This document shows, piece after piece, positions 1,931 through 47,118 of a stretch of DNA of 64,000 nt (position 1 is its first letter; every line of letters begins with the position of its first letter). The stretch is taken from assembly GCA_026770705.1 (NCBI GenBank), contig JANJGN010000005.1, positions 159,340,001-159,404,000 of the forward strand, given 5' to 3'. A model generated the notes under the pieces. It worked only from the letters and a program-made list of their open reading frames with translations, did no database searches and was not told where the DNA came from. This DNA is from Isurus oxyrinchus. Its lineage: Eukaryota. Both the position numbers and the translations under genes were made by a program.

Positions 1931-2032
1931 TGAAGTTTATGTTTTTCCAGTTTGATGAAGGTTTTAGTGAGCCAGCTGCTTGAACGAATGTTCCTTTTCC
2001 CTTAGTGACTTATGAGTATATTTTCCTTTCAG

Positions 2033-25260: not shown

Positions 25261-26190
25261 ATAGACTTAAGGAGGATTTTGACAACATGCGGTGAGAAGA
25301 CACTATAAGATCCTCACATCGCATCTGTGAACGTTTGACTCCAGTCTTGCTTATGGCAGCACAAATACTCTGTGATAATGCTCCTGTCATGGAGATGCAG
25401 TGGAGGCCCTCATAGTTGTGCGATTGCAGGAGGATGATGACGAAATGCAGTGAGGGCACTCCATAGGTCTTCACATAGCCTCTGAGAATGTCTGACTGCT
25501 GTCTGGTCGAGGGTAGCTCGCTTGCACTCTTGTGATCAGGGACATATCATAGAGACACAGCCATGAAACTTCAAAAGCATCTGATCCTTTGTCTGCCTAC
25601 AGAATCTGACCCCTTCAGGAGCACAGCATCATTGGTCACAGATGCTGAAGAGATGGGGGGCCAGCCCCACCCTAAAGGTGCTGAGAGCACACAGAGAGAA
25701 TGACAGTACTTTATGACGCTGCCCACAACATTCTGGCAGCAATGACAAGCACCGTCGATATGCAGGCATCACTAATGTGTTCAGAGAATATGAGACTGGA
25801 CTGTCACTTTGGTCTGAAGGCTGCAAAAAGCACGGGGAAGAGGCCCTGGACTCAAGACACCTGCCTTTATCTTGTGCAGAAAGGTTTCACATCTGAATGA
25901 CAGAAACCCTGCTCATCAGAACAAGGAGCCATAGGCAGGGAGACATTCTTGGGAGTTTATCAGCAAAAGTGAACAGTATGTACAGGTGTTTAACACCTGT
26001 GTCCAGGCCGTGCAGCATTTGAATCACAGCCATCCAGTACTACTTACACTTCAAACCAATAGTGCACAGGGCACTGCTGTGAAGAAATTGAGTCTGGGTT
26101 CCTCAGTTGTATGTGACAGAGCTCAAAAAATGCTACCCAGGAAAAGCATGTTTAATGTTTTCATTTACTGGTGAATGATACTGAATAAAA

Positions 26191-29100
26191 GTAGCTCTTC
26201 CTGATTGGGCTCAGGTGCACCTTGTTGCTGCCTGGGTGGGAGCTGTTGCTTTGTGCTGTGCCTGAAGCTGGAAGGAGCCAGGAGTTACTGCTGAGATTTT
26301 GCTGCTTACTGTCTTTTGCCTCGGGCACCTCAGGACTTCTTTATTTCCTGTTTTGCTGCTGCCCAGAGGACACTAAAAGCGTGTAAAACCTCATTGCTGG
26401 TGTTTTTGCTGCAGCTGCAGGGCCTGAAGCATGAAGCCTTGGAGGAGAGAGAGGGAGAGGAGGTACTGCAGGACAGGGAGGCCAGGAGGCTTTACCTAAC
26501 ACCTGAGGTCGCTGTATGGACATTTGTTTGGAGGGGGCAGAAGACAACCTCGTGCTTTATGGGGGGGTGGAGAGAAGACATTTGTAGAGACTTAGGGAGA
26601 AGGGGCGTGTGCGTTCATTTAAGATCTTGCCGCAACCCTACCCCAACCCCGTCACTTCGCTGGTGTCTACGTTCAGTAGCTGGTGCTGCCTGGTGAAAAG
26701 GGATGGTGCCGATTCCTGTGTGCCAGGCAGTGCTGGCTGCCTGGTGAAGACATTGTCCTCCCCCCAAAGGAAGACCAGCAAGGCCCCAATTCCCCCCTAC
26801 TCCACCAAGTGACACCTGCCTGTTCTCCCTCTCCCTCCTCTCCTCTCTGTTTTTGCCATTTCAGAGGGAGAGGTCACAACATCCTTTCCCCTCTCCCCCG
26901 GGTGGGATATTTTTGCATATAGAGCTCAGGCGGCTATGGCTGAGCCCCTAGGGCTGTGACAGGGTTGCCTCCAGCCAGGCCTTCCTGGGCAAGCATGGAG
27001 GCGGTGCTGTCACCGGTGGCGGGGCTCCCCAAGAAAACATGCGGGTGCAGCTGCTTCTGTGGCCCCTCCTGCTTCCACAACCCCATCACCCATCCGTTTC
27101 CTTACTAAGACCCTGGGTGTCGAGCTACACGCACCCCGAAATGACAATCGAAGCGTGTGTTAAGGCTATGGCTGGGGTCCTCTGCCCCTCAGCCATAGTT
27201 GCCGCCTCGAAGATATATAGCAAAGCCATATTTTTCTTGAGGTCAGAATGGGCGGTGCACCTGGCCCTTGAAAAGTGGCTCACTGTGGGACATTACTGGC
27301 AGTGGACCCTTTGGCGAGAGCCCAGAGGATCATAATTTCGAACGTCCCCAGTGAGCTCCTCCTCCCTTCACCTCCATCAACTGGGGGAGGTTAGGTCAGG
27401 GGTCGTACCCATCCTGCTTAGCCTCAAGGAGACAGCTCTCCGCCATGTGCACTCCTTATAGTGCCAGATTTTCATCCGCCTGGCGCAGGAGGAATGCACC
27501 AAGGGGGGCTTTAGTGTTGAGCACGAGGGGGGCCGCCCACCAGGTACTCTGGACTGTGGATGGCCTGCAAGGAGGTGCGGCATGTCCAAAAGCACTGCCC
27601 TGCCTCCAAGGCTGCCAATGTCACATGGGTGGCCGCGGCTGCCACCGCCACTCCTCCCCCCTCCACCATCCCATCTTCCTCTCCACAAGGGTAGGAGCTG
27701 CCACCACCTCAGTTGCCGGCAAGGTGGAGGAAAGAACCCCATGCCAGAAGCATGTGTTGTGCTTCCTGCAGGGAATACCCGCCTCGTGGTCACAGCCCCC
27801 CAAACCTGCCCTGACCCCCCAGACCCTTGAAGACACCGGCTTGAGGTGAAAATAAGTCTTGCAGCCCTGGCGACGTAACTGTGCATGCTCCCTGGCCCAT
27901 GGGGATCTCAATGCCATGTCCTGGGCCTGGCATCGTCCCTGTGCAGGTTCCTGGGTCCAGCAGCAAAGGGGCAAGTGATCCTGAGCCGGTGATCCTCAAG
28001 AAAATTGACCTGCTCATACCCCAGAGGGCAGAGCAACTTGGGGGGGTGAGAGGGTGGGCTGGTGGAGGCCTTGGAGATGGAGGTCTCAGCAACACCCAGC
28101 CTACCCCAGAAGAGGTGCCACACCTTGGAAGGGGATCGTGAGGTCCACTGTGTTTCCTCCCCTGGTGAAAAGGTGGTGGCTTTTCAGCCCCAGAAATCCT
28201 TGCTCTGCCCTCTGAGGGAGCCCAGATCCCTGACTCTCGCTGCAGTCCCCTGAGCAGGGCCCCTCGGGAGTTAGTGAGTCCATCACCCTTGCAGTGGTGC
28301 CCCACCCTGACCCACCTTATATCCCCAAAATGCCATCTGGCGTGGCAGTCCATTCATGGCCCCAGTGGTGGGTCATCGGGCAGCAGTGGCGAGGAAGGTA
28401 TCCCTGCTCCCTCCCGACCTTCAGCTCCGGGCGGCTCCATCCAGATCTTTATCCGGACTCGCCAGGCCACCCGGTGCCTGAGGAGGAGTGGGGCTCTGAG
28501 CCGCTGCCAACCTTTGGCCAACATCCCCAAGAGGACACCAGAGAGGACCCCTCTGCCCTTTATTCTGGTGGCAGCTCTGAACCAACCCCCGTACTCGATA
28601 TGGGGAAGGGGTTGGAAGCTGGAGGCGATGACCTGGGGATGGACGGGATTTAGGTGGCGAGCACCGGGGAGGACTTAGAGTTGCTGTCTGGTGAGGAAGT
28701 GTCTCCTGGTGTCCCCCCATCGATTCTCCCCTCATCCCTGTACGGGAGCCCCAGCATTTTCTAGCGAGCAATCGCAGTCATCAAGACAGTGTCCAGTTGG
28801 CCTTGGACCGGTGGCATTCTTTTCTGCTGGTGTTCTGCTCCGCCCATGAGGCTCTCAAGGCCCCTGGGCTGGACCAGAAAGCCAAACTGAGGGTATTTAC
28901 ACTTCTTGCGGAGTGGAAGGTTTAAAAAATCCCCTCCTCCTTGCACTTTGCACTAGGTGATGGTAGCACTTATTTCTGGAAATGAAGACAACCATAGCTT
29001 GCTCTAACATCAACGGCAGCAGGGACGCATAGCGCAGTTTCCAGAACTTCTCGGTCCTCAGGGGCAGGAAGTAAGTGGTGTGCTTCCTGCAGGAAACCAT

Positions 29101-32100
29101 ACCATTTCGGGAGTTAGAGCTACATGGCTCCTGGAGTAGCGAGGGGGGGATCTGCATGAGTCCCTTGCCTCCAATTCTGGCGGGGTGGCTATCTTATTGG
29201 CTCCACATTTTAAGCTGGAGATATTGAGGGCCAAGGAGCCGGTGCCAGGCAGGTTGCTGCACCTTACTGTGTGCCTAGGGGGTGCGGCACTTCACTTCGT
29301 GAATGTGTATGTTCCCCTGGGCTCACAGCAGCAAGCGAGCTTCTTTGAGGAAGTGTCCACTCATCTGGGCTCCATTGACGCGGGCGATGCATTGTCCTCA
29401 GGGGGGATTTCAACTGTATCCTTGAGGCCCGGGACCGTCACAGTACCCAGCACCGCATGCCAGGTGTGAGTAAGTTGAGGGACCTGGTGGGTGCCTGGCG
29501 GCATCTCCATCCTGACTCCAGCATTTTCACTTTCGTGCCAGAGTGTCCACACTGCACTCAGACGGGCTCCACGTACGGGCACTTTATCAACCTGCTGCTG
29601 GGGGTGTGTGGTGCCTGGACTCGTTCCATCATTTCTGGGCTGGCTGGAGAAGAAAGCAGGGAAGCTTCCCCTCCTTGAGGCTATGGCGGGACGTGGGCAA
29701 GGCTCACGCTCGCATCTTCTGTTAGGAGTACGTGAGGGGGCCGACAAAGAGGTGGAAACCCAGGATTGAGGAGTAGGAGAAGGAGGTGTCCGACCTGGAG
29801 GCACGTCTCCGTCAGCCCGACGCGGACATGGCCCTGCGGCTGGCGTACAAAGAGAAGGGTGCGCTGCAGGAGCTGCAACTCATCGGGTCTCACGGCGCGT
29901 ACGAGATCGCAGATCCTTCCCCAAGGACCTGGACCGCAACTTCCCCCTTCCCGCTGAAAATAAGGCATGAGGTCCGTCAGCAGCTACTTACGCTGGTGGC
30001 TGATGACGGATCCCTTGTCTCAGATCCGGAGGCCATCAGGGCCATTGCCAAAATCTATTAAACTGCCCTGTTCTCTCTGGATCTGTCCAGCGAGGATGCT
30101 CGCAGAGTCTTGTGGGAGGACCTACCGCAGGTCAGCCCGGAAGGCGCGAGAAAGTTTGACTCCCCTATAAGTCTGGGGAAGCTGACTGGTGCCCTCGACA
30201 GCCTCTCCAGGGGTAAGTCCCCAGGGCTGGACGGGCTGACTGTGGAGTTCTTCAGGGCATTCTGGGAAGTCCTGGGGAACGACCACGTGGGGGTCCTGGG
30301 GGAAGAGTATCGTGACTGGGGAGATGCCCCTCTCGTAGCGCAGGACGGTCATTGCCCTGCTGCCCAAGAGGGGCATCTCCACCAGCTTAAGAATTGGCGC
30401 CTGGTCTCCCTCCTCAGCATGGATTACAAGATCTTTGCCAGGACAATATTTTCTCGCCTTGGCACTGTGTTAGGCCACATGATCCACCCTGACCAGTCCT
30501 ACACCGTCCCAGGACGGACCATGTTTAATAATATCCATCTGGTCTGGGACATCATCCACTTTTTCCAGAGAACTGGACTGTTGAGTGCCTTCCTGTTTCT
30601 TGACCAGGAGAAGGCATTCGACAGGATGGATCACGAATATTTATTCGGGACTCTGCGAGCATTCAGGTTCAGGGTGCATTTCGTCACCTGGATCCGACTT
30701 CTGTACACCACCGCGGAGTGTCTAGTGAAGGTTAACAGGTCCCTGATGGCGCCCCTTCACTTTGGCAGAGGAGTGCGTCAGGGCTGCCCCCTCCCCGTCT
30801 AGCCAATTGTATTCTATTTGCGTGGAGTTTTTCCTGCGCCTCTTGTGGAGGAGGTTGTCGGGATTGGTTCTGCGCAGGCCGAGCATTGGGGTTGTCCTCT
30901 CACCTTACACCGATGATGTGCTCCTCACATTCTCCAACTCGGCTGACTTGCGAGTGCCAGGAGGTCTTGTCTGCCGTGTCCTCCACCAGGATCAGCTGGA
31001 GCAAGTGTTCTGGACTTCTGGTCGGTCGGTGGCAGATGGATCCCCTGCCCAAAGAGCTCAGGCCTTTCACTTGGAGCAGGACCAGTCTCCTCTACCTGGG
31101 GGTCTATCTCTGCCCTGCTGAGGAATCCTGGCCGGCAAACTGGCAGGAACTGGAGGCTAAAGTCATCACTCAACTGCGACGCTGGACAGGACTGCTCCGA
31201 GTGCTGTCTTACCGGGGTCGAGTACTAGTCATAAACCAGCTGATTGCTGCCATGTTGTGGTACCGGCTGGTCACTTTGACCCCTCCTCTGGACTTTGTCA
31301 CAAAAATCCAGAGAATGCTTGTTGATTTCTTCTGGGACAAAAGGCTGCACTGGGTCACTGCTGAGGTACTGAATCTCCTGCTTAGGGAGAGTGGGCAGGC
31401 ACTGGTGTGCCTACGCACATAGGTGGCGACCTGCCGCCTTCAGACCCTGCAGCGATACCTTTACGTCGAGCCCCCTCCGAGATGATGTGCCCTGGTGACC
31501 TATTTTTTCCGCCAGGTGTATGGCTTGAATTATGACATGCAGCTCCTGTTTATAGAGCAGAGGGGCCTCGGTGGATCCTTGCAGGCGTTGCCCGTATTTT
31601 ACCAGGACCTGATCAAAGTCTGGAACATGGTTGCCTCGTGTCGCAGCTCCCCGCCATCAGGTGTAGTGGCTATCATCAGAGAACTGCTCAGGAATCCGCA
31701 CCTCCGCCATTTTTGGTGGCTGGTGGAGAGGAGGGCTGTGGCTGCCAGGGTGACAAGGATCAGGGATGTGCTGGGTGGCAGAGGAGTGGGCTGGATGATT
31801 CCACAGGAGTTGTCGCATCGCGCATCGGTGGACGTCTGGCTCACGGCTAATGCCATCCATGGCCTTAGGATGGCCGTGCTCGGTCCCGACGTCATTCTGG
31901 GTCTTGAGATAGCGCACGTGCATGATGGTCTTCTGTCTGAGCATACCCCTGTTCAGATGGAATTCCACATTGGTCCAAAATCATGAACACTCCCTCAGGA
32001 GCCGGAGCCCGCAAACTGAGTCACCTTGAGGAAATGCCCTCTGTGTCCTTTGGCGCGGAGGGGTTTCCTGTACAGGCTGCTGCTGCACACCCTTCACGTC

Positions 32101-32796
32101 ATTGCCCTATCCCGCTGCTTCACCTTGTTGCCATCTGGCAGCGGAGGCCCCCAGTGGGGGTTCCTCTACGGGTTGTTCTCCTACTTTCCATCAGGGACCT
32201 GGAGTGGAAGGTGTTGCACGCAGCAGTCCCATAAAATCGTTGCATGTGTCGGTTCACGGACTTCCAAAATGCCTGCCTTTTTTGCAGCCTTGTGGAGTCC
32301 ATGGACCATGCTTATATAAGTTGTTTTAGGTTGCACCCCCTTTTTAGTTATTTGAAGAACCGTTTATTGTTTTGTTTGCGTGTTAGTCCCATGCTCCTGA
32401 TCTACAGGCACCCAGTGCAGAGAGGAGTGGGGAGGGAGGAGGACCTCCTCGTGAACCTGTTCCTGGGCCTTGCCAAGTTGACCATGAACAAGCCCAGGCA
32501 GCGGGTGATCGAGGGGGTCGTCTGGCCCGCCTGTCTGCCCCTCTTCCACGGCTACGTTCGTGGCCGGGCATCCCTGGAGAGGGAGCACTTGCTGTCCACC
32601 GGCACCATCGAGGCCTTCCATGCTCGGTGGGCACAGCAGGGACTAGGGTGTTTTATTGACCCTCTTCACATTTTGGTTTGATGTTTGTAAGTTTTCTTCA
32701 AATTTTGTCTTTGTTTTTGCAGTTTTCCTTTAAGGGGCTGCTTTTTAATTTGTCTCTGATTTTGTTAATTTAGCTTATTTGCTTTGGCTCAAAAGA
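26191..32796 (+). mobile_element. Tx1-clade LINE copy 1 (near full length, decayed): 5' UTR, ORF1 ~26936-28955, ORF2 28982-32681
   Basis: ORF1 AIVAASKIYSKAIFFL; APE motifs SNING, LQET; RT motifs KSPGLDGLTVEFF, LDQEKAFDR, GVRQGCPL; C-terminal CLFC..ESMDH...C. Confidence 0.92.
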
Positions 32797-35700
32797 GTTG
32801 CACCTTCTTGATAGGAATCAGACGCAGCTAGTTACTGCTGAGTTGCTGCTCTTGCTGCTGCTTTGGATCGGAAGGCAAGAACAAGAAAACATCTTTCCTG
32901 GGGCGCTTACCTATCTGATGAGAGAAGGGAAGGAAAAAACAGAACACTGCTGATAAGGGAGGAGAACTGCTGCTCTTGGAGGTGGCCTATAGAGAGAGGC
33001 CTCAGGCCTTGGACCTAGCCCCATTTGCACAGAGAAGACCAAGTGGGAGGAAGTCGCATCTGGACCAAAATCTGTTGTGACGTCAAGAGATGGGTGTTGT
33101 GGACCTGAGTGGGGGAGGGTGGGTGGAAGATTTCTGTCCAGGGGATCATTGTGCTGACAGGAGCTGGCGGAAGAGCAAATAATACTGGTGGGGTGTGGCT
33201 GTGTTTGTGGACTTTCTTTTTGACATCTTGTGACTATTTGCACCCACCTCACCCTTCGCCTTCCTTTCAAGTTCAGGCTAGCTGGGGCTGCTTGGTGAAT
33301 AATACCATCTGTCTCTAAGACTCTGTGCTGGGCAGTTCTAGCTACCCGGATGAAGACGCTTGCTTCCCTCTGTCCAAAAACATTTTATTGTGCAGGAACC
33401 ACCTACCCACCAGTGGCACCCGACCACCTTGTGACATTCCATCCTCCTGTTCCCTCCTCCCTTTCTACCCTCCTCTCTCTGACCTTTGTTGTTTGGAGAG
33501 TACATTTCCCAACCTTATCTCCCTGTATTATATTAATATCAATAACATTTTAGGGTGGCTGTGGCTCCGATAGCCCATGGCTACACCATTTCCAGTGGTG
33601 GCCAGGCCATTGAAAACCACCTATACGAAAGAGGTAGTTTCTCCATCTCATGCCGCTCCCATGGCCCTGTCACCTTTTCGTCTGGTGACTCGGGGGCGTG
33701 GTGTTAAAAGCTACACCCACCCTGATGTGTCTATTGAGGCCGGCGTGAAGACAATGGCCGGGGTTGTCAGCCCATCGGCCACTTTTGTGGCCTCTAAAAT
33801 GTATGGCAAGGCCATGTTCTTTCTGGTCCAAGTGGGTTGTGCACCTGATCCTGGAAAAGGGGCTTACTGTGAGCGAGTCCTTTCTGGCGGTGGGTCCTCT
33901 TGAGGCCACCGACCAGAGACTTGTATGTCCAACGTCCTGCCCTTTGTCAGTGAGCTCCTCCTTCCCCACCTCTTATCTACTGAGGGAGGTCAGTTCCGAA
34001 ATTGCGCTAACCCTGCTCAGCCCGCATAGATTCCTTTTGGCACCAAGCATTTGTGCGTCTGACCTGGGAGGAGTGCATGGAGGGGGGGGCTTCAGTGTAG
34101 AGCATGAGGGGGTCGCCTACAGGGTCTTCTGGAATGCAGTTGGTGTGCGGTGCCATGCCTGAAAGGAGGTGGGGCGCATCTGAAAGAACTGTCCCACCTC
34201 CAAGGCCACCAACGTCACTGAGGTGGCAGCTCCACACCAATCCCCGCCAGCACTCCAATTACAAGGGGATGTGACACCGGATGCTGGCGAGACCAAGGGA
34301 AAGAAGGTGCAGAGGAAGACCAAGCATCTAGAGGCTGCTTCCAAACTCATTCCCAACCCCAGCCTGAACCCCAGAACCCCCCCAAGACACAGGCTCAGGG
34401 GAGAAAACAACATATGGCCCTGGCGATGTAACCACGCGTGCTCCTGGGCCCATAGGCATCTCAGCACTAAGTGCTGGGCCAGGTGTCGTCCCTGCGCGGG
34501 TTCCCAGGTCCACTCGCGATGGAGCATGAGACCCCGAGCCAGTGGTCATCCTCAGAAGGATTGACCAGCCAAAACCCCAGAGTGCGGAGCGCCTGGAGGC
34601 AGTGGAGGCCTCACAGATGGAGGTCTCCCCAGCCTATCCCTTGGAGGGGGGAGGATCTCGTGACTTGTAAGGTCAAATGTGACTCCTGCCCCGATGAAAA
34701 GGTAGGAGCATCTCCACCTTGCTAGTCCTCGCTCTGCTCACTGAGTGGGGCCTAAAACAATGACTCCTTGCCACAGTTCCCTGAGCAGGGCCCGTCGGGG
34801 GTCAGTGAGAGTAACACGCTTGCGATGGTACCCCACCCCGACCCACCTTGCATTCCCGAGATGCCAACTGGCCCCCAAGGGCACTGCAGCAGTTGTTTTA
34901 CTGCCCCAAGCACTGGGCCATCGGGCAGCGGTGGTGAGGAAGGCCTCCCTGCTCCCTCCCAACCTTTAGCGCCAGGCGCCTCCATCCTCAATCCAGAGTT
35001 TTCTCTGGACTCATTGGCCGACTTGGCGCCTGGAGTGGAGCGAGATTCTGAGCTGCTGCCACCCTGTGGCCCAGAACCGGAACTGGAGACCAGAGAGGAC
35101 CCCCTCTGCCCTTGATCCTGGGGGTGGGATTAAGGGGGAGGTGGAGCTGACTGGCAGTTCCAAACTAGCCCCCATACTCAACACGGGGGAAGGAGTTGGA
35201 AGCTGAAGGTAATGACCCAAAGGAGGATGGCGTTTCGGTGGTGAGCACTGGGGGTGACTTAGAGTCGTTGACGGGTGAGGTGGTGGATCCCCTGGTACCT
35301 CCCATCGATTCTCCCCTCATCCCAGTACGGGAGCTCTAGGATTTTTTAGCAAGTAATCATGGTCGCCGAACAGAGTCCAGTTGGTCTTGGACCGGTGGCA
35401 TTCATTTGCACTAGTGTTCTGGTCCGTCCATGAGGCCCTCAAGGCCCTCGGACTGGACCGGAATACCAAGTGGAGGGTCCACGTGTTTTTCACTGGGCCC
35501 CTGAAGGAGAGGAAGACTTAGTATTTCTCTCCTTCCACTATCTGAGGTGTTGGTGATGGGTTAAACACTTCTGATAATGAAGAGTACTATAGCTAGCCTT
35601 AGTATCAAAGGCAGGAGTGACACACAGCACGGGTTCCAGAACTTCTCAGTCCTCAGGGATGGGAGGTATGCGGTGTGCTTCCTGCAGGAAACCCATAGTA

Positions 35701-38272
35701 TTCCAGGATTCAAAGCTACGTAGTTCCTGGAGTGGCTAGGGGGGATCTACATGAATCACCTAGCCTCCAATTCTTATTAGCCGCACATTTTCAGCCAGAG
35801 ATAATGAGTGTCAAGGAGTCAGTGCCAGGCTAGTTGCTGCACACTATTGTGCGCCTAGAGGGTGAGGCACTTCACTTTCTGAACTTGGTGCGCAGCAGCA
35901 AGCGAGCTTCTTTGAGGAAGCATCCACTCATCTTGACTCCATCGACTCGGGCAAGTGCATTCTCCTTGTGTGGGGGTGTACCCTTGGGGCCAGGGACCGT
36001 CTCAGTGCCCAGCACCTAAGTTGAGTGCCCTGGTCTTCAACTTGGTGAATACCTGGCAACATCTCCATCCTGACTCCAGCCTTTTCACTTTCGTGCCACC
36101 TGAAGTTGGAGTGTCCAGATGCGACCGCCTTTATATTTCCAAGGCATTGCTGCCCTGTGTTCCATCGGCTTCAGTGCAGCAAGTGCCGTGCACAGACCAC
36201 CGCCTGAAGTGGGTGAAACTTGGTCCTTTCTGCGCTCAACTGGGGTCCATGTACCGGCACTTCAACAACCTGCTGCTGATGGATGAGTGGTTCCTGGACT
36301 CGTTCCGTCATTTCTGGGCCAGCTGGTAAAGGAACTGGGGAGGCTTCCCCTCTTTGAGGCTATGTTGGGATGTGGGCAAGGCTCACGTCCGCATCTTCTG
36401 TCAGGAGTACGCAAGGGGGTCGACAAAGAGACGGAAACCCAGGATTGAGGCGTTGGAGAAGGAGGTGCTCAACCTGGAAGCACGTCTCCGTCAGCCCGAT
36501 GAGGACCCGGCCCTGTGGCTGGCATACAAAGAGAAGAAGGCAACTCGCCGGGTCCCGCAGTGTGTTTGTGAGGTCGTGGATCCGGTTCCTTAAGGACCTG
36601 TACCGTGGCTCCTTCTCGCTAGAAAGAAGGCACGGAGTCCGTCAGCAGCTCCTTACACTGTTGGCCAATGACGGATCCCTTGTTTTTGATCCGGAGGGCA
36701 TCAGGGCCGTTGCCGGAGCCTACTACACTGCCCTGTTCTCTTCGGATCTGTTCAGCGAGGATGTTCGCAGAGGTTTGTGGGAGGGCCTGCCACAGGTTGG
36801 CCCAGAGGGCGCTGGACAGCTTGACTCCCCTAATAAGTCTGGGGGACCTGACTGGCTCCCTTGACAGCCTCTCCAGGGCCAAGTCCCCAGGCTGGGTGGG
36901 CTGACCTGCAGCCCTTCAGAGCATTCTGGGACCTCCTGGGAAACAACTACGTGGTAGTCCTGGGGGAGAGTATCGTGACCAGGGAGATGTCCCTCTTGTG
37001 GTGCACGGCTGTTATTGCCCTGCTGCCGAAGAGGAGGGATCTGCGCCATCTTAAGAACTCAAATCCGGTCTCAATCCCCAGCAGGAATTACAAAATCTTT
37101 GCCAGGGGAATGTCTTCTCTCCTAGATAGTCCCAGGCCGGACCATTTTTGATAATATCCACCAGGTCAGTCTCAGACCTGAGGGGCATTCGTGGTTCCTT
37201 GCAGGTGTTGCCTGTCTTTTACCAGGACCTGATCAAAGTCTGGAACATGGTCGCCTCGCACCGCAGTTCCTCACCATCAGGAGTAGCAGCTATCATCAGA
37301 GAACCACTGCTGAGGAATCCACACCTCTACCACTTTCGGTGGCTGGTTGAGAGGAGGGCTGTGGCTGCTGGGGTGACCAGGATCAGGGACGTGCTGGGTG
37401 GCAGAGGAGTGGGCTGGGTGCTCCCACAGGAGTTGGTGCATTACAGCCATCCATGACCTTAGGACGTCGTCATTCTGGGGCTCAAGATGGTGTGGGTGAG
37501 TGATGGTCTTCCATCCGAGCACAGCACTTTTCAGACGGATTTCCACAATGGCCCCAAGCCCTGAACCTTCCCTCAGGAGCTGCAGCCCCACAACCTGAGT
37601 CACCTCACAGAAATACCCCCCCCCACCCCGGGAGTCCTACATGGGAGCCCTCCCCCTTTCCATCGGGGAGCTGGGTGGAGAGTGTTGCGTGCGGCAGTCC
37701 CATACAATCGTTGGACGTGTCGGTTCACACTCTCAAGATGCCTGCACTTTTTTTGAGACCTTGTGGAGTCTGTGGACCATGAATATGTAAGTTGTTGTAG
37801 GCTGCACTCCCTTTATGGTTTTTTGAAAAACCTTTTGCTTTTGTTTGCGTTTCAGTCCCGCTCTCCTGATCTACAGGCACCCGGTACGGAGTGGGGCGGG
37901 GAGGGAGGAGGATCCCCTCGTGAACCTGCTCCTGGGCCTGGCCATGTTGGTCGTTAACAGGTCCAGGCAGCGGGCAATCGAGGTGGATGTCCGACCCAAC
38001 TGTCTGCCCCTCTTCCACGGTGACGTTCGCGGCCGGGTGTCCCTGGAGAGAGAGCGCGTGGTGTCCGCTGACACTGTTGAGACCTTCCATGCTTGGTGGG
38101 CACCGCAGGGAATGGGGTGCTTTATAGACCCCTTTAATCACATTGTGGCTTAATGTTTGTAAGTTTCTTTTAGATTTTGTCTTTCGTTTCTGCAGTTTCC
38201 CCTTAAGAGTCTGCCTTTTAATTTCTCCCTTGATTTGTTAATTTAGTTTATTTGTTTTGTAACTCAAAAAGA
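32797..38272 (+). mobile_element. Tx1-clade LINE copy 2: ORF1 from 33577, ORF2 35577-38153 with an internal deletion near 37165
   Basis: Colinear with copy 1; ASKMYGKAMFF, TDHR, FYQDLIKVWNMV, GCFIDPFNHI*. Confidence 0.9.
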
Positions 38273-39179
38273 GTTACATCTTCTTGATTGGATACAGGTG
38301 TGCCTCGCTGCTGCCTGAGCTGTGGCTGTGGCTGGAGATGGAAGGAGCCAGGAGCTGCTGCTGTTGTTGCTCTTCTCTAACATCATTGGACTCTTGTCTG
38401 TTTTCAGACCCTCCAGACTCTGTACAACTGTTGCTGCTACTACTCAGAAGACAGCCTCCCAGTAAAACCTGCTGCTGCTTATATTAGGGCTGCAGGGCCA
38501 TGGAGCCTGCAAGGCCTGAAGCCTACTAAGGAATTGGAGGAGAGAGAGTGAAGACAGTGCTGCAAGACGGAGAGGCCAGGAGGCAGGCATTTAATTACAA
38601 ATACCAGAGGTGGGTGTCTGAGCTCCTGTTTGGTGGGGGCCAAAGAGATGTCATGTGCTTTATGGGGTGAGGACAAGGAAACTTGAAAGACCTGGGGAGA
38701 TGGGGTTTCTCTGTGCTCTTAGCCCCCCAGCCCCCTCCTTCCCTCCTCCCTTTGTGCTCAAGTCCAGGTAGCTGGTGCTGCCTGGCGAAGAAGGATTACG
38801 CTGGCTTCTCTGTGCCAGGCAGTGCCGGCTGCCTGGTGAAGGTATCATTGCCCTCCCCAAAGCCCACCTTACTAGAAGAACAGCGGGCCCCCACCCCACC
38901 CCACCTAGAGATATCCACCCACCGTGCATCCTCTATTCTCTCCCTCCTGTGTCTCCCTGCCCTCCCCTCCCTATTTTACTACATAGAGGCCACACCATCC
39001 TTTTTCCCCTTTCCCCATAGTGGAATATAGGCATCAAAATCTGAAGGAGTTCAGGGTGGGTGTAACTCATCCCCTATGGCTGATGCAGAATCACCAGTGG
39101 CCAGGCCCTCCGGGTGACTGTGGAGGCAGATTCATCACTAGTGGCGGGGCCCCCCAAAAAAGCACATGCGGGAATAGCT

Positions 39180-39412
39180 AAAAGCAAAATACTGCGGGTG
39201 CTGGAAATCTGAAACAAAAACAAAATTTGCTGGAAAAACTCAGCAGGTCTGACAGCATCTGTGGAGAGATAGACAGAGTTAACGTTTCGAGTCTGTATGA
39301 CTTGAAGAAGAGTTCTGTAGAAGAGTCATACGGACTCGAAATGTTAACTTTGTCTTTCTCTCCACAGATGCTGTCAGACCTACTGAGTTTTTCCAGCAAT
39401 TTTTCTTTTTGT
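39180..39412. mobile_element. non-coding fold-back mini-Penelope element inserted in Tx1 copy 3
   Basis: Two inverted copies of the Penelope terminus; 13-bp TSD tgcgggaatagct at 39167-39179 and 39413-39425. Confidence 0.88.
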
Positions 39413-40805
39413 TGCGGGAATAGCTGCTTGTGTGGCCTCCTCTGCTCCTGCGGCCCCATCACCATTTTGCCTCCTGACCAGGGCCCTCAGGGTAAAGAGC
39501 ATCCCGCGACGACTATAAAAACAAGCATAAAGGTTTTGGCCAGAGTTGTCGGCCCCTCTGCCATCGTTGCAGCCTCGCACATGTATGGGAAGGTGGTGTT
39601 CTTCCTGAGGTCCGAGTGGGTCGTGCACCTGGCTCTTGCCAAGGAGCTCATCGTAGGCAGGACCTATTTGGCATTGGATCCTCTTGAGGCCACCGCAGAG
39701 GGGCTTATTTTATCCAATGTCCCGCCCTTCGTTCCCGATGAGCTCCTCCTCCACCACTTTCACCAACAGGAGGCGGTCAGGTCTAGGGTGGTGCCGATCC
39801 TGCTTGGCCCCAGGGAGCCCAGTCTCCACCACGTATATTCCTTCCGCCAGGCCCGGGAGGAGTGCACAGAGGAGCAGTTTGTTGTAACCTTTGAGGGGGC
39901 TGCCTACCACATCTTTTGGTGAGCAGACAGTGTGCGGTGCCATGCCTGTAAGGAGGTTGGGCATGTGCAGAAGAACTACCCTGCCTCAAAGGCCGCCAGC
40001 ACCACCCAGACAGCGACGGCTGGCACCGCCACACCTACCCCCCTCCACCACTCCATTTGCTTCCCCCCAGGGATCAGAGTTGCTGGCAGTGGAAGTCACC
40101 CTGTCCACCAGTGAGGCGGGGAAGGAGCATCCCGCAAGAAGAAGCTGCAGCAGAAGGCTAAGCATGCCGAGGCGGTTCCCAGCCCCAACTGCAAACCACA
40201 ACCCAATCCAAGACACCTTCTGCCATCAGCTCGGGGAGTGTTGACAGTTCCAGGCTCGGCATCGATCTTGCATGCGATCACAGGTCCGTAGGCACCTCAG
40301 CATAGAGTGTAGTGCCCGTCAGCCCCCGGGTCCGGTGACAGAGGTGCATGCATCCTTGAGCCAGTGATGGTGCTACAGTGGGTCAGAGCACCCAGGTCCC
40401 AGAGGGTGGGGAGCCAGGAGGAGGAAAGCGAGGAGAGGTGGGGCCTCCGACATAAAGGTATCCCCCACCCGACCCTCACCCGGAAGGGGCGCCAACCCTC
40501 GTGTCATGTGCAAGGTCAAGCATGCTAATCCCTCCCCCAGTAAAGAGGCAGCAGTGCCCTCACCCTCCCAACCCTGTGATCCTTCGCCCCACATTCTGGG
40601 AGACCAGGATGACACTGACTAGCTGCCACAGTGCCCTGAGCTGGGCACCTAGCAGGGTGGTTAGGGTGCAGCTATTCTGGCGGCACACTGCACGGAGCCA
40701 CCCCGTAACCCTGAGGCGCCTGCTGACTCATCGGGGGACTGCAATAGTGCCAGTGACGCTGGTTCATTGGGTGGTGGCGGCGAGGAAAGTCTCTCTTTCC
40801 CAACC

Positions 40806-40875
40806 TTTGGCATTGGATCCTCTTGAGGCCACCGCAGAGGGGCTTATTTTATCCAATGTCCCGCCCTTCGTTCCC
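40806..40875 (+). repeat. exact 70-bp duplicate of 39667-39736
   Basis: tttggcattggatcctcttgaggccacc...cccttcgttccc occurs twice; peptide LALDPLEATAEGLILSNVPPFVP appears in two ORFs. Confidence 0.9.
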
Positions 40876-43800
40876 TTTGGTGCCAGGTGCCTCTGTCCTG
40901 GTCCAGAGTTTTTTCTAGACAAACTGGGTGATCCAGTACCTGAGAGGAAGTGGGGCTCTGAGCTGCTGCTACTCCTTGGCCCATACTCTCAAGAGGAGAC
41001 CAGAGAGGACACCTCTGCCCTTGATCCTGGGGGTGGGAATGAGATGTGGGGCTGATTGGCGGCTCCAGTCCTTTACTTTTCTAAGGCGTTCATGTCCTGC
41101 ATTCTATCGACGTCTGTGCAGCAGGTGCTGTGCACAGACCACCATCTAGTGTGGGTGGAACTCATCACGTACTGTGCTCAGATGGGGTCCGCGTACTGGC
41201 ACTTTAACAACCTGCTTCTGGAGGACGAGTGGTTCCTGGACTCGGTCCGTCATTTCTGGGCCGGCTGGAGAAGGAAGCAGGGATGCTTTTGTCCCTGAGG
41301 CTATGGTGGGATGTGGGCAAGGTTCACGTCTGTGTCTTCTGTCAGGAGTACGTGATGGGGTCAACAAAGAGTTGGAAATCCAGGCTCAACAAGTTGGAGA
41401 AGGAGGTGCTTGACCTGGAGGCACATCTCCATCAGCCCGATGCGAACCTGGCCCTGCAGCTGATATATGAAGAGAAGGGCGTGCTGTGGTACCTGCAACT
41501 CGTTGGGTGCCACAGTGCGTACGTGAGGTCATGGATCCAGTTCCTCAAGGACCTGGACCACTGCTCCCCTTTCTACTCACTGGAAAAAAGGCACGGGGTC
41601 CATCAGTAACTCCTGATCGATGACAGATCCCTTACCTCAGATCCTGAGGGCATCAGGGTTCTTGCCCGAGACTATTACATTGCCCTGTTCTCTCCGGATC
41701 CATCCAGTGAGGATGCTTGCAGAGTTTTGTGGGAGGACCTGCCACAGGTTGGCCCAGAGGGTGCAGGAAAGTTTGACTCCCCTATAAGTCTGGGGGAACT
41801 GACCGGTGCCCTCGACAGCCTCTCCAGGGGCAAATCCCCAGGGCAGGGCGGGCTGACTGTGGAGTTCTTCAGGGCGTTCTGGGACGTCCTGCGGAGTGAC
41901 TATGTGGGGGTCCTAGTAGAGAGTATCCTGACCGCAGAGATGCCTCTCTCATGGTGCAGGGCTGTGATTGCCCTGCTGCCTGAGAGGGGGGATCTCTGCC
42001 ATCTTAAGTACTGGCGCTCGGTCTCCCGCCTGGTCTCCCTCCTCAGCACGGATTACAAGATCTTTGCCAGGGCAATATCTTCTCACCTTGGCACCATGCT
42101 GGAACATATGATTCACTCTGACCAGTCCCACACTGTCCCAGGCTGGACCATCTTTGATAACATCCATCTGGCCCGCGACATTATCCACTTTTCCCAGAGG
42201 ACTGGGCTGTCAAGTGCCTTCCTGTCTCTTGACCAGGAGGCGTTTGACAGGGTGGAGCACAAATATTTATTCAGAACTCGGCGAGCATTCATGTTTGGGG
42301 TGCATTTCGTCACCTGGATCTGACTTCTGTACACTGCCGCAGTGTCTAGTTAAGGTTAACGGGTCCTTGATGGCACCCCTTCGCTTTGGGAGAGTTGTAT
42401 TCTTTCTGCGTGGAGCCTTTCCTGCACCTTTTGCGGAGGAGCTTGTTGGGACTGGTTCTGCATGGGCCAGGCATCGGGGTGATCCTCTTGGCTTACACTG
42501 ATGATGTACTCCTCATGTTCACCGACCCAACTGACCTGCGGAGGGTGTATGAGTGCCAGGAGGTCTATTCTGCCGCATCCTCTGCCAGGATCAACTGGGA
42601 TAAGTGTTCTGGGCTCTTGGTCGGTCAATGGCAGGTTGATCCCCTACCTGAGGAGCTCAGGCCTTTCACTTGGAGCAGGACCAGTCTCCTCTGCCTATGG
42701 TTCCACCTGCTGAGGATTCCTGGCCAGCGAACTGGCAGTAGCTGGAGGCCATAGTCACCATTCACCTGCGGCGCTGGACAGGACTGCTCCGAGTGCTGTC
42801 TTACCGGGGTCGAGTTCTGGTCATAAACCAGCTGATTGCTGCCATGTTGTGGTACCAGCTGGTCACTTTGATCCCTTCCCCGGAGTTTATCACAAAATCC
42901 AGAGAATGGTCATCAATTTTTTCTGAGACAAAAGGCTACACTGGGTTGCTGAATGTCCTTCTTAGGGAGGGCGGTCAGGCGCTGGTGTGCCTATGCACCC
43001 AGGTGGCAACTTTCCACTTTCAGGCCCTGCAGCGATACCTTTATGTAGAGCCTCCTCTGAGATGGTGTATTTTTCCGCCAGGTGCACGGCCTGAATTATG
43101 ACGTGCAGTTCCTGTTTCTAGACCTGAGGGGCCTTTGCGGCTTCTTGCAGGCGTTGCCCATCTTTTACCAGGACCTGATAAAAAGTCTGGAACATGGTCA
43201 CCTTGCAACACAGATCTCTGCCGTCAGGAGTAGCGGTTATCGTCAAAGAGCTGCTACTCAACAATCTGCATCTCTGCCACTTTCGGTGGCTGGTAGAGAG
43301 GAGGGCTGTGAATGCTAGGGTGACCAGGATCAGGGATGTGCTGGGTGGGAGAGGAGTGGGCTGGATGATTCCGCAAGAGTTGGCATATTGTGCATCAGCG
43401 GATGTCCAGCTCACATTCAATGCCATCCATGAGCTTAGGACAGTTGTGCTCGGCCCAGACGTCATACTGGATCTCAAGGATGCGCAGGCGTGCGGTGGTC
43501 TTCTCACCGAGTGTAACCCTGTTCGGTTGGAATTCCACATTGGTTCCAAGCCCTGAACCCTCCCTCGGGAGCTGCAGACCCGCAACCTGAGTCACCTCGT
43601 GGAAATGCCCTCTGTGCTGTTTAAGTATGACTGTATGGGCTGCTGCTGCACACCCTTCACTTCCTTGTCCTCGCCTGCTGCCTGGGCATGCCCTGGTGTA
43701 CCTTGTTGCCATCTGGCAGCGGAAGTCCCAAGTGGAGGGCTCTCTATACGGGAGTCCTCCCCCTTTCCATCGGGTACTTGGGGTGGAGGGTGTTGCACGC

Positions 43801-44371
43801 AGCAGTCTTGTACAACCATCGGTTGTGTCGGTTCACAGACTCCCAAAAGGCCTGCGTTTCTTGTAGCCTTGTGCATCCATGCACCATGAATTTGTAAATC
43901 ATCGTAGGCTGCACCTCCTTTTTCAGCTATTTTAAGAACTTTTTACTGTTGTTTTATTAGCGTTGGACACCTACGGGCACTTGGTGCTGTTGGGGAGGGA
44001 GATGCGGGGATGGAGAAGGACCTCCTCGTGAACCTGCTCCTGGGTCTGGCCAAGTTGGCCATTAACAGGTCCAGGCAGCAGGCGATCGAGGGGGTCATCG
44101 GACCTGACTTGCCCCTCTTCCATGGCTAGGCTTGCGGTCAGGTGTCCCTGGAGAGGGAACACGTGTTGTCCGTTGGCACCATCGAGCCCTTCCATGCTTA
44201 GTGGGCACCGTGGGGATTGGGGTGTTTTACTGACCCCTTTAATCATATTTTGATTTTTTTTGTAAGTTTCCTTTAGATATTGTTTTTTGTTTTTGCAGTT
44301 TCCCTTTAAGGGGCTGAGTTTTAATTTGTCCCTTGATTTGTTAATTTGGTTTATTTCTTTTGTAACTTGAG

Positions 44372-46019
44372 TTACATCTTCTTAACTTTCCTAAACCTGC
44401 CACTACGTCTTGGTGCACCCCGGCCATCCACAGGCAGGGCAGCCTGCTGACTGTTATGCCCTGTCTGTGATAACCTTGGCGAGCATCCTCATGAGGCCCA
44501 AGACCTGGAGGACCCCAGCCTGCTTTTGGGGTCCTGCTGTGTGGCAGTGTCAACCTCCTTGGCCTGTGGAGCTGGCGCTGCTGAGGTCACAGGAAGAGGG
44601 GATTCGGATGAGCCGGACACTCTGGGAGTCACCTGAATGGATGGCCCCAGGGGTGTACAGCCGCTGATCGTCCTCTCTATGGGTATCCAAGCGCCCCTGA
44701 CTGACTCCTTGAGGAGATGGGGTAGCTGGAGTGAGATCAAGGTGCCCTGCACCTCTCTCACATACATACTATTGGAGGTCAACTATGGCATCAGCGATGG
44801 AGTTCAGCCCGCGCAGCGATGCGGTAGTGATGTCCTGGACCCAGGTCTCCATGGCAGCCGCCATCCTACCAGTGTTGACTTCAGTGCCTTGGCATGCCGG
44901 TGTTATGACTTCAGCCTGAAGACGGACGGACTCCTCCGTTGTGCCTTGCAATCTGAAGAGTGCAGAGAACATCCCTCTCTGATGTTCCCTAGCTTGCCTT
45001 TGCAGCTCCAGCAACTGTGACATGGCCGAGTCCAGAGGCTCATCATCTGACTTGGACTCAATAGATTTCTGGCCACCAGCAGTCTGCCGAGTGCTGACAC
45101 CTGGGAAGTCCCTGCCGCTGCCTGCTGTAGATCAGAAGGTGCGATGTGCTCACCAGATTGTGATCCCGAGGCTACTCTAAAGCTAGGTCTCAACAAGGCG
45201 TGTGTGTCTGCAATGGTGGAAGGTGGGGGTGAGCGCTGTGATGGGACTTCAAGGACAATGCCTTTAGATTCCTCTTCAAAAATTTCTTCGGGGCTTCATT
45301 GGGGGGTCTGGGTCATGGACTCCGTCAGCTGTTTCCCAGATGTGCCTGTGGAAGCAAAGGGAGATAATTAGTGCTTGGCAGTGGATGTGAATCAGGACAC
45401 CTCACTCACAGCATGGTTGTCTGATAGATGTTGCACTGCTGGATCCTCACTTGGTAGAGCACAGGAATGGTCCAGATCGTTGTTGGCCAGCTGGATAGCT
45501 CTGTTTTCAAAATCTGTGATTTCAGGCATTCCTCCACCGGTCTGCGACCTCTCCCTCTTGTGTGCCAGCTTGTCCTGCATGAATAGAGATGGAGCGAGTG
45601 TAAGCAGGATGCCTGACAGACCAGGTGAAAAGTATGCCTGGCCTGTGTGGGTGCTGAGTGGTCCCATGGATGGGATGCGGACAATGAAGGTGAGTATGAG
45701 AGAGTGAATAGTGATGCCCCTTGAACTGACAGTGAGGGAGGGCCCTGTGGATGTGTGATGAGTTTGTGAGTTGAGAGTGATGAGAAGACTTACCCTGGTG
45801 GAACCAAGGAGATTCATTCTCTTGGGTGGCTGTCCTCTTTTCAAGGGCCTTGGCGCTGACCACCACTGCCTCCCAAGCCGGATTAGTGAGGTTGCTGGCC
45901 ATCCTGCAGCCAGAGCAGGGGTAGTGAACATCACGTCGGGCCTGCACTGCGTCCAAAAGGCACTCAAGGGGCGCGTCATTGAACCTGGGTGCTGCAGTCC
46001 TTTTGCCTTTCAGGGCCAT
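44372..46019 (-). pseudogene. Harbinger Myb/SANT-like DNA-binding gene, 3 exons (46019-45794, 45574-45410, 45345-44372), decayed
   Basis: MALKGKRTAAPRFNDAPLECLLDAVQARRDV...AWEAV; donors GTAAGT and GTGAGT, CAG acceptors; ends PRRSGRFRKVKKM* with TAA at 44374-44372. Confidence 0.8.
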
Positions 46020-46919: not shown

Positions 46920-47043
46920 TTTTCAATAAACCAATTTAACTAAATTAGGAAAAACGAGAGACAAAACAAGGGACACTGCAAACTAAAAGGAAACTTAGAA
47001 ACGTTAAACCAAAATATGTTCAAGGGGTCTATAAAGCACCCCT
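46920..47043 (-). mobile_element. short Tx1 3'-end fragment
   Basis: Reverse complement ggggtgctttatagaccccttgaacatattttggtttaa...aagtttcc...tttgcag matches the ORF2 end and 3' UTR of copies 1-3. Confidence 0.7.
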
Positions 47044-47118
47044 AAATTAGTGCGCTGTGGAGCACTCTTCCATAAATTAACCATTCTTTAACAACCAAGT
47101 GATTAATCTTTAAGTTAT

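What the first reader, a model, noticed from the sequence alone, without database searches (positions are those of the whole stretch)
26010..44400. Tx1 LINE array inserted 1 nt past the stop codon of the Harbinger Myb-like gene: candidate LINE that targets a DNA transposon
Seen: the 18 kb block lies between the convergent Harbinger genes. Its right junction is aacttga|Gttacatcttcttaac, and on the - strand ttacatcttctt is KKM-TAA, the last codons of the Myb-like gene. The insertion site interrupts neither Harbinger coding region. Known: Tx1-clade LINEs are often sequence-specific; Xenopus Tx1L/Tx2L target the DNA transposons Tx1D/Tx2D, while Keno, Mutsu and Dewa target U2 snRNA, 5S rRNA and tRNA-array spacers. 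Inference: this may be a Tx1 family using a safe site in Harbinger and hitchhiking on it. I do not know of a described Harbinger-targeting Tx1. One locus cannot show specificity.
Basis: partly seen in the sequence, partly recalled or inferred. Interest (0 to 1): 0.82.

Follow-up and report, generated by a model that had tools for sequence, protein, structure and literature searches.

The report
Shark Tx1 LINEs stacked in Harbinger
Three decayed copies of a Tx1-type jumping gene sit head to tail at one 14-base site at the end of a gene inside an old Harbinger DNA transposon, a shark example of a targeting habit already described for Tx1 elements in frogs and crocodilians.

Summary
The block is real. 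It is three head-to-tail, full-length but decayed LINEs (26203-32795, 32810-38271, 38286-44369). They lie between a decayed Harbinger transposase gene (DDE_Tnp_4) and a convergent Myb/SANT-like gene. The RT piece is 55% identical (249 bits) to Xenopus Tx1 ORF2, against 65 bits to human L1 ORF2p, so the Tx1 call holds.

Its left edge (26010) is about 190 bp too far left.

The 14-mer AGTTACATCTTCTT, or a decayed form, stands at all four junctions. At the right end it supplies the gene's last codons, KKM-stop. I read it as a target-site duplication regenerated at each insertion. Uneven divergence between the copies argues for separate insertions, not local duplication.

A genome-wide test of specificity could not be run, because the tool that fetches other loci was closed. 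Reads show only that both families are high-copy.

Kojima 2015 (passages read) describes Tx1-9_AMi, which inserts preferentially into alligator Harbingers, besides Tx1L in Tx1D and Tx1-Mar in Mariner. Hitchhiking is untested.

This scan has already noted the same association on other DNA of this genome (unchecked AI notes). Verdict: a new member of a known kind, of moderate interest.

The parts
24242..25194 (+). Decayed Harbinger transposase gene; the C-terminal part 24832-25194 matches DDE_Tnp_4
   Evidence: Pfam PF13359 E 5.2e-15 on 24832-25194. Three-frame reading shows frameshifts and stops.
25195..26189 (+). Non-LINE sequence left of the array, read as the Harbinger region downstream of the transposase gene. 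AATAAA stands at 26184-26189, directly before the motif.
   Evidence: No significant similarity to the LINE 3' UTRs. AATAAA position. That it belongs to the same Harbinger copy is inferred.
26190..26202 (+). Junction J0: decayed target motif AGTAGCTCTTCCT
   Evidence: Alignment A1; sequence.
26203..32795 (+). Tx1-clade LINE copy 1, full length and decayed: 5' UTR, ORF1-like region, ORF2. APE homology 29014-29537, RT 29621-30953, C-terminal part to 32663. 3' UTR ends ...GGCTCAAAAG.
   Evidence: tblastn with Xenopus Tx1 ORF2 P0167 covers residues 14-1291 in 6 pieces of 34-51% identity. RVT_1 E 2.9e-17. 55% identity over 229 aa.
32796..32809 (+). Junction J1: motif AGTTGCACCTTCTT (2 mismatches)
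32810..38271 (+). Tx1-clade LINE copy 2, the most decayed. About 1.1 kb of RT is missing (37123/37174 against 30459/31554 of copy 1), and the 5' UTR is only partly alignable to copies 1 and 3.
   Evidence: blastn; tblastn; 5' UTR alignments; longest branch 0.83 in the tree.
38272..38285 (+). Junction J2: motif AGTTACATCTTCTT (exact)
38286..44369 (+). Tx1-clade LINE copy 3. It has the full 5' end, lacks most of the APE region, and carries a nested palindromic element at 39173-39417.
   Evidence: blastn; tblastn; RVT_1 E 7e-11 on 41727-42323; inverted repeat I1.
44370..44383 (+). Junction J3: motif AGTTACATCTTCTT (exact), continuous with Harbinger sequence. Bases 44372-44383 are KKM-TAA on the - strand.
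44372..46019 (-). Decayed Myb/SANT-like second gene of the Harbinger. It starts at ATG 46019, has at least one intron-like gap around 45794-45578, frameshifts, and a premature TGA at 44489-44491.
   Evidence: Three-frame reading. ESM Atlas nearest clusters are Myb_DNA-bind_5, score 0.92 with 200 shared features. No Pfam hit. High read depth.

Best explanation
A shark lineage of Tx1-clade non-LTR retrotransposons carries an APE-type endonuclease that recognises a short sequence in a high-copy Harbinger DNA transposon. The core is AGTTACATCTTCTT, which is the last three codons plus the stop codon of the Myb/SANT-like gene and two bases beyond.

Proposed mechanism (inferred, not shown):
1. The bottom strand is nicked at the left edge of this sequence.
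2. The LINE RNA is reverse-transcribed from that nick (target-primed reverse transcription).
3. The top strand is cut about 14 nt further on, so each insertion is flanked by a duplicated copy of the target.

Both duplicated copies stay usable, so later insertions land beside earlier ones and build a head-to-tail array with one target copy at every junction.

In this locus three separate insertions occurred. Copy 2 probably came first. Copies 1 and 3 then went into the two target copies that flanked it. All three LINEs and the Harbinger have since decayed.

Shown here: the anatomy, the Tx1 affinity, the motif at all four junctions, and uneven divergence between the copies.
Inferred: the cleavage positions, the order of insertion, and genome-wide specificity.
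For: (1) Tx1 affinity.
- Copy 1 aligns to Xenopus Tx1 ORF2 (YTX2_XENLA, P0167) over residues 14-1291.
- The RT piece scores 125/229 identical and 249 bits to P0167, against 65 bits to human L1 ORF2p chains.
- The three copies group with whale-shark gene models and next to Xenopus Tx1 in an RT tree (96/97 support for the shark group).

(2) Motif at the junctions.
- It stands at J1, J2 and J3 with 2, 0 and 0 mismatches, and in decayed form at J0.
- It is followed by the conserved LINE 5' end GATTGG at J0-J2 and by Harbinger coding sequence at J3.
- It is preceded by non-LINE DNA at J0 and by LINE 3' ends at J1-J3.
- It therefore belongs to the target, not to the LINE.

(3) Separate insertions rather than local duplication.
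- Copies 1 and 3 are 78% alike in ORF2 (3304 nt) but 65% in the ORF1-like region (696 nt) and 72% in the 5' UTR.
- The 5' UTR of copy 2 aligns to the others over only 142-222 nt.
- Copy 1 against copy 3 differences that are not CpG-type number 75/50/87 at codon positions 1/2/3 (p 0.004); transversions number 24/18/36 (p 0.03).
- J2 and J3 are identical to each other. J0 and J1 share G at position 5 and C at position 8. These look like two duplication pairs (read).

(4) Reads.
- The Harbinger side has 648-3152 reads per direction per bin, and the LINE 3' region up to about 1000.
- Depth is 144 (X21) at 44368 and 1137 at 44433. The bin means imply that the high Harbinger depth runs up to about 44372 (my estimate).
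- One contig of a related species (X5) joins ...motif+AACT (to 44387) to a 5'-truncated LINE 3' UTR (from 44286). That is a stacked insertion at the same site elsewhere.

(5) Precedent.
- Kojima 2015 (passages) reports Tx1L in Tx1D, Tx1-Mar in Mariner-N4_AMi and Tx1-9_AMi in Harbinger. It also notes tandem SINEU-3 insertions 'sandwiching a TSD'.
Against: - Specificity rests on one locus, one contig joint, and unchecked notes.
- Codon-position bias is absent for copy 1 against copy 2 (p 0.77) and copy 2 against copy 3 (p 0.96), on 160-230 codons each. The bias for copy 1 against copy 3 is modest.
- Relationships inside the shark group are unresolved in the tree. It does not show that the copies are nearer to copies elsewhere than to each other.
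- A related LINE 3' tail fragment at 46930-47050 (- strand) lies outside any Harbinger and is not followed by the motif. Related tails are therefore not confined to this site.
- The J0 motif is weak, about 10 of 14.
- The Myb label has no Pfam support.
- Harbinger termini were not found convincingly.
Confidence: 0.75

Rival explanations
1. One chance LINE insertion into this Harbinger was followed by local tandem duplication of the unit (LINE plus its 14-nt duplication), for example by unequal crossing-over, and then by neutral decay. No targeting is needed.
For: - All copies have the same orientation and are separated by the same motif.
- There is no codon-position bias in pairs involving copy 2.
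- The tree does not resolve the copies from each other.
Against: Neutral decay after duplication predicts equal divergence along the unit. Observed:
- For copy 1 against copy 3, 78% identity in ORF2, 65% in ORF1 and 72% in the 5' UTR.
- The copy 2 5' UTR is mostly unalignable.
- Copy 1 against copy 3 shows an excess of third-position changes, also among non-CpG changes (p 0.004).
- Branch lengths differ (0.12, 0.21, 0.83).
- A contig joint in another species shows a truncated LINE at the same motif.
- Several unchecked notes report the same site on other pieces of this genome.
Confidence: 0.1
2. The 14-mer is part of the LINE itself (its first or last bases). The first LINE landed next to the Myb-like gene by chance, and later LINEs inserted into LINE sequence. 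The target would then be the LINE, not the Harbinger.
For: - At J1 and J2 the motif is embedded between LINE ends, so those junctions alone cannot tell.
- The last bases of the LINE, GTAACT(C), are the reverse complement of the start of the motif. This shows some sequence relationship between the LINE end and the motif.
Against: - At J3 the motif runs straight into Harbinger sequence and encodes KKM-stop in the frame that stays open in most genomic copies.
- At J0 it follows non-LINE DNA.
- Bin depths imply that the high-copy Harbinger signal reaches about 44372, that is, includes the motif (my estimate).
- The X5 contig joint has the motif plus four further Harbinger bases in front of a truncated LINE rather than the LINE 5' end.
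Confidence: 0.05
3. Insertion here reflects a regional preference without recognition of this sequence, for example open chromatin or an AT-rich gap between two convergent 3' ends.
For: The site lies between an AATAAA signal and a stop codon in a short AT-richer stretch.
Against: Three insertions share the same boundary to the base and the same 14-nt duplication. A regional preference would scatter the junctions.
Confidence: 0.05

Closest known systems
Tx1-9_AMi of Alligator mississippiensis (Kojima 2015, Genome Biol Evol 7:1702, PMC4494074; passages read, supplementary figures not available)
   Same: A Tx1-clade LINE that inserts preferentially at a fixed position in Harbinger DNA transposons.
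   Different: - The site is about 300 bp from the 5' end of three Harbinger families. Here it is the stop codon of the Myb-like gene, between the two convergent genes.
- The host is a crocodilian, not a shark.
- An alligator 'TX1 149 kDa protein' model (P0172) is only 43% identical to copy 1 in RT and groups elsewhere in my tree. Whether P0172 is Tx1-9_AMi is unknown.
Tx1L/Tx2L of Xenopus laevis, inserted in Tx1D/Tx2D (cited in PMC4494074 and PMC6719617 as Christensen et al. 2000; those primary papers not read)
   Same: - 55% identity in RT, and homology along the whole ORF2 with APE, RT and zinc-binding C-terminus.
- A LINE that homes to one site in a DNA transposon.
   Different: - The target is a non-autonomous piggyBac-type element (as stated in PMC4494074), not a gene end in an autonomous-type Harbinger.
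- The target sequence is different.
Tx1-Mar / SINEU-3 in Mariner-N4_AMi of crocodilians (Kojima 2015)
   Same: Repeated insertion at one 16-nt duplicated site in a DNA transposon, with tandem insertions 'sandwiching a TSD'. The architecture is the same as the array here.
   Different: - The target superfamily is different.
- The stacks described there are mainly SINEs. Here there are three full-length LINEs of about 5.5-6.6 kb.

Membership tests
Tx1 clade of non-LTR retrotransposons | RT domain groups with Tx1 rather than with L1 or other clades (clades are defined by RT phylogeny; recalled, and stated in PMC4494074 methods) | tested here: met
   249 bits and 55% identity to Xenopus Tx1 ORF2, against 65 bits to human L1 ORF2p and 30-34 bits to R2. 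The copies sit next to Xenopus Tx1 in an RT tree of 14 rows. Caveat: no named L1 sequence was in the tree, so the clade boundary itself was not drawn.
Tx1 clade of non-LTR retrotransposons | N-terminal APE-type (Exo_endo_phos) endonuclease in ORF2 | tested here: met
   Copy 1 at 29014-29537 aligns to P0167 residues 14-192 (34-36% identity, E 5e-17). Pfam places Exo_endo_phos at residues 7-230 of P0167. Direct Pfam scan of the 94-aa window piece gave no hit. Copy 3 lacks most of this region.
Tx1 clade of non-LTR retrotransposons | Cys/His zinc-binding region after RT | tested here: met
   Copy 1 at 32196-32663 aligns to P0167 residues 1136-1291 at 41% identity, overlapping zf-RVT at 1117-1179. 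The ORF at 32244-32681 shows C-x2-C-x7-H-x4-C. The window piece itself has no Pfam hit.
Target-specific LINE family (criterion of Kojima 2015: one kind of sequence in more than 20% of flanks) | Same flanking sequence at many independent genomic copies | not testable with these tools
Metagenome and viral scans were blank.
PIF/Harbinger DNA transposon | DDE_Tnp_4 (PIF/Harbinger-type) transposase | tested here: met
   PF13359 E 5.2e-15, and Plant_tran E 0.0035, on 24832-25194.
PIF/Harbinger DNA transposon | Second gene for a Myb/SANT-like DNA-binding protein | tested here: inconclusive
   ESM Atlas nearest named clusters are all Myb_DNA-bind_5 / MADF (best 0.92, 200 shared features). There is no Pfam hit even at E 10 for the three pieces tried. 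The exon pieces were searched apart and never joined.
PIF/Harbinger DNA transposon | Terminal inverted repeats and a 3-bp target duplication | tested here: inconclusive
   Only a 9-nt exact inverted match was found (23723-23731 / 46290-46298, E 1.4). By eye it extends to about 13 of 15. No clear 3-bp duplication was seen.

The most novel reading that the evidence does not exclude
The LINE may be co-adapted to its Harbinger host rather than merely parked in it.
- It enters the few bases between the AATAAA of the transposase gene and the stop codon of the Myb-like gene, and restores that stop codon by target duplication.
- Its 3' UTR carries an antisense AATAAA 15-20 nt from its end (copies 2 and 3). 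This could replace the displaced polyadenylation signal of the Myb-like gene, so a loaded Harbinger could stay expressible and carry the LINE along when it transposes.
- The last bases of the LINE pair with the first bases of the co-transcribed target (8-bp hairpin at J2, z -2.4). This may help position the RNA for target-primed reverse transcription.
Probability: 0.12. Interest if true: 0.7.

Novelty: new member of a known kind. Interest (0 to 1): 0.4.

Why it matters
Tx1-clade LINEs are the main vertebrate example of retrotransposons that home to other transposons. A shark lineage that uses a Harbinger gene end would extend this habit to cartilaginous fishes. It would also add a second, different Harbinger site to the one known from alligator.

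The site would offer a defined 14-nt target for studying how APE-type endonucleases acquire sequence specificity. Arrays like this one also explain how 18 kb of LINE sequence can pile up at one point.

It does not open a new principle. The behaviour, the tandem stacks around a regenerated duplication, and a Harbinger target are all in print (PMC4494074). My three paper searches listed no paper whose title or abstract start describes the shark case. They cover open-access text only. Repbase Reports and the supplements of Kojima 2015 were not visible.

Tried and rejected
- Fourth LINE remnant. I asked whether the DNA left of J0 is a truncated fourth LINE, because it ends in AATAAAAG like the CAAAAAG at the LINE ends. 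This was rejected: local alignment scores are no better than shuffles.
- Tree test of independent origin. I asked whether copy 1 or copy 3 is nearer to whale-shark or ENA sequences than to each other. The result was unresolved.
- Codon-position test. It gave a signal only for copy 1 against copy 3. I added the CpG control because CpG decay alone could mimic the bias.
- Harbinger termini. Not found convincingly.
- ORF2 C-terminal piece against the protein collection. There were no hits. That search sees only proteins of 80-254 aa, so it says nothing about longer relatives.
- Names of the nearest proteins. They were mostly unnamed turtle (Caretta, Lepidochelys) and whale-shark models. This was of no use for the clade call, which came (YTX2_XENLA).
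- Read depth as a measure of how many LINE 3' ends adjoin Harbinger. Rejected, because clipped reads still count on each side and the junction's loose ends were not among the rows shown.
- Findings search. By sequence it was blank, and one search by words was blank.

Full report
**What is there**

The window is AT-rich (38-43% GC), except for a block at about 24000-46000 with 52-58% GC.

At the left of this block a + strand reading frame, broken by frameshifts and stops, matches the PIF/Harbinger transposase domain DDE_Tnp_4 (24832-25194, E 5.2e-15). At the right, on the - strand, a gene starts at ATG 46019 and runs with at least one intron-like gap and several breaks down to TAA at 44374-44372. 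Its first exon piece has no Pfam hit. Its nearest ESM Atlas clusters are all Myb/SANT-like (Myb_DNA-bind_5; best 0.92, 200 shared features). I searched its exon pieces apart and did not join them.

**The LINE array**

Between the genes lie three head-to-tail LINE copies:
- Copy 1, 26203-32795.
- Copy 2, 32810-38271. It has lost about 1.1 kb of RT.
- Copy 3, 38286-44369. It lacks most of the endonuclease region and carries a nested 240-bp palindromic element.

All three have many stops and frameshifts. All three keep both the family's 5' end (GATTGG..TCAGGTGC) and its 3' end (...TTTATTTGTTTTGTAACT). They are therefore full-length insertions.

**Clade**

- The Xenopus Tx1 ORF2 protein (YTX2_XENLA, returned as P0167) aligns to copy 1 over residues 14-1291 of 1308.
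- The 230-aa RT piece is 125/229 identical to it (249 bits). The best solved-structure hits, human L1 ORF2p chains, reach 65 bits, and R2 proteins reach 30-34 bits.
- Pfam places Exo_endo_phos, RVT_1 and zf-RVT on P0167. The window aligns across all three.
- In an RT tree of 14 rows the three copies group with two whale-shark gene models and one ENA contig protein (support 96/97). This group sits beside Xenopus Tx1, a sturgeon protein and sea-turtle proteins.
- No named L1 was in the tree. The clade call therefore rests mainly on the score contrast.

**The junctions**

Alignment of the four junctions gives:
- J0: ...ACTGAATAAAAG | AGTAGCTCTTCCT | GATTGGG...
- J1: ...GGCTCAAAAG | AGTTGCACCTTCTT | GATAGG...
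- J2: ...TGTAACTCAAAAAG | AGTTACATCTTCTT | GATTGG...
- J3: ...TGTAACTTG | AGTTACATCTTCTT | AACTTTCC...

The 14-mer with up to 2 mismatches occurs 4 times in 64 kb, three of them at J1-J3. The expected number is 0.59, and 0 of 100 shuffles reach 4.

The motif is preceded by non-LINE DNA at J0; that DNA shows no similarity to the LINE 3' UTRs. At J3 it is followed by Harbinger coding sequence. It is therefore a direct repeat of target DNA around and between the LINEs. This is what repeated insertion with a 14-nt target-site duplication produces.

On the - strand the motif reads AAG AAG ATG TAA CT. The duplication thus contains the last three codons and the stop of the Myb-like gene.

In this copy the frame has an earlier TGA at 44489-44491. 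At 44491, however, 1605 of 1771 X21 reads from all genomic copies carry the other base, which turns that codon into AGA. KKM-stop is therefore probably the real end of the gene.

Its left edge (26010) and its predicted empty site are not.

**Independent insertions or local duplication?**

Evidence for separate insertions:
- Copies 1 and 3 are 78% identical over 3304 nt of ORF2, only 65% over 696 nt of the ORF1-like region, and 72% over the 5' UTR.
- The 5' UTR of copy 2 aligns to the others over only 142-222 nt.
- Between copies 1 and 3, differences fall 113/86/144 on codon positions 1/2/3. After CpG-type transitions are removed the counts are 75/50/87 (p 0.004), and transversions alone are 24/18/36 (p 0.03).

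Neutral decay after a local duplication would give even divergence and no codon bias. At least copies 1 and 3 therefore diverged partly as active lineages.

Evidence against, or neutral:
- Pairs with copy 2 show no bias (p 0.77 and 0.96), on only 160-230 codons.
- The tree cannot resolve the copies.

Order of insertion (inference only): branch lengths are 0.12 for copy 3, 0.21 for copy 1 and 0.83 for copy 2. J2 and J3 are identical. J0 and J1 share G at position 5 and C at position 8. Together these suggest that copy 2 came first and that copies 1 and 3 then entered its two flanking target copies.

**Other copies in the genome**

The scans of metagenome and viral contigs found nothing. The protein search with the ORF2 C-terminal piece was blank within its length limits.

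Reads laid on 43600-45400 at 80% likeness show the following:
- Both families are high-copy. In X21 48,095 reads were laid. Per direction and bin, depth is 648-3152 on the Harbinger side and 10-1013 on the LINE side.
- Depth at 44368 is only 144 (X21) and 113 (X22), against 1137 and 1147 at 44433. From the bin means I estimate that the high Harbinger depth reaches about 44372.
- Most Harbinger copies therefore do not have this particular LINE 3' tail beside them. Many family members differ from copy 3 after 44293 (997 reads with one common loose end), so this does not measure occupancy.
- The loose ends at the junction itself were not among the rows shown.
- One contig of a related species (X5) joins the motif plus AACT (to 44387) to a 5'-truncated LINE 3' UTR (from 44286). 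This is a stacked insertion at the same site on other DNA.
- In the other direction, a related LINE 3' tail fragment at 46930-47050 (- strand) lies outside any Harbinger and is not followed by the motif.

This scan's earlier notes list the same association on several other pieces of this genome. Among them are two follow-up reports and a note on this very stretch (s1-900809) that reads the four junction motifs as I do. These are unchecked AI notes. I count them as leads, not support.

**Known relatives of the phenomenon**

Kojima 2015 (PMC4494074; abstract and passages read, supplements not available) states the following:
- Xenopus Tx1 inserts into Tx1D, a non-autonomous piggyBac family.
- Crocodilian Tx1-Mar families and SINEU-3 insert into Mariner-N4_AMi with an expected 16-nt duplication.
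[quoted passage not shown] Cosby et al. 2019 (PMC6719617, passage read) cites Tx1 in Tx1D as an example of transposons that target other transposons. The whale-shark genome paper (PMC8455134, passages read) says only that sharks possess Tx1 L1-like repeats.

Three searches listed no paper whose title or abstract start describes a shark Tx1 homing to a Harbinger gene end. I judged the listings by title and start of abstract only. Subscription journals and Repbase Reports are not covered.

**Verdict**

The anatomy is confirmed with corrected boundaries. The targeting reading is well supported for this locus and plausible genome-wide. The claim that no Harbinger-targeting Tx1 is described is wrong. 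Hitchhiking is untested.

The most interesting loose ends are these:
- The antisense AATAAA in the LINE 3' UTR, 15-20 nt from its end in copies 2 and 3. It could serve the Myb-like gene after insertion.
- The pairing between the LINE's last bases and the first bases of the target.

Both could be chance in a T-rich tail.

Noticed in passing
window 39667-39736 and 40806-40875: A 70-bp stretch of the ORF1-like region of LINE copy 3 recurs 1.1 kb downstream at 100% identity, although the copy is otherwise old and decayed. This points to a recent local duplication, a gene conversion, or an assembly artefact.
   Followed up: no
window 39173-39417: A roughly 240-bp palindromic element (arms 90 nt, 92% complementary) is nested in the 5' part of LINE copy 3. 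Related copies lie at about 6420, 9012, 10444, 49001, 50602, 60312 and 63305. Other notes of the scan call these mini-Penelope-like.
   Followed up: no
window 46930-47050, - strand: A fragment related to the end of ORF2 and the 3' UTR of the LINE (86% over 64 nt to copy 2) ends ...GGTTTATTGAAAAG. It lies outside the Harbinger and is not followed by the 14-nt motif. It may be a truncated copy of another subfamily or the tail of a partner SINE.
   Followed up: partly
window 38258-38279, 44361-44377, 32786-32800: The LINE's last bases, GTAACT(C), are the reverse complement of the first bases of the target, (G)AGTTAC. A hairpin therefore spans each 3' junction: 8 bp at J2 (z -2.4, 6/200 shuffles), 6 bp at J3 (z -1.7), and weak at J1.
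   Followed up: partly
window 38247-38252 and 44350-44355 (read on the - strand): An antisense AATAAA stands 15-20 nt from the 3' end of LINE copies 2 and 3 (AATAAG in copy 1). It lies just downstream of where the Myb-like stop codon adjoins the LINE. The native left flank has ATTAAA on the - strand starting at 26156.
   Followed up: partly
proteins P0001, P0004, P0010 and others: Many of the nearest proteins to the shark RT piece (50-59% identity) are unnamed gene models of sea turtles (Caretta caretta, Lepidochelys olivacea). One model, P0001 of 1555 aa, contains four RT stretches, which suggests tandem Tx1-like copies in a turtle genome too. The loci could not be fetched.
   Followed up: no
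window 44007-44293: About 900-1000 reads per run match this part of copy 3 but leave it at 44007 and 44293 with uniform loose ends (agreement 0.89-0.94). The commonest genomic subfamily therefore differs from copy 3 by indels just outside this stretch.
   Followed up: no
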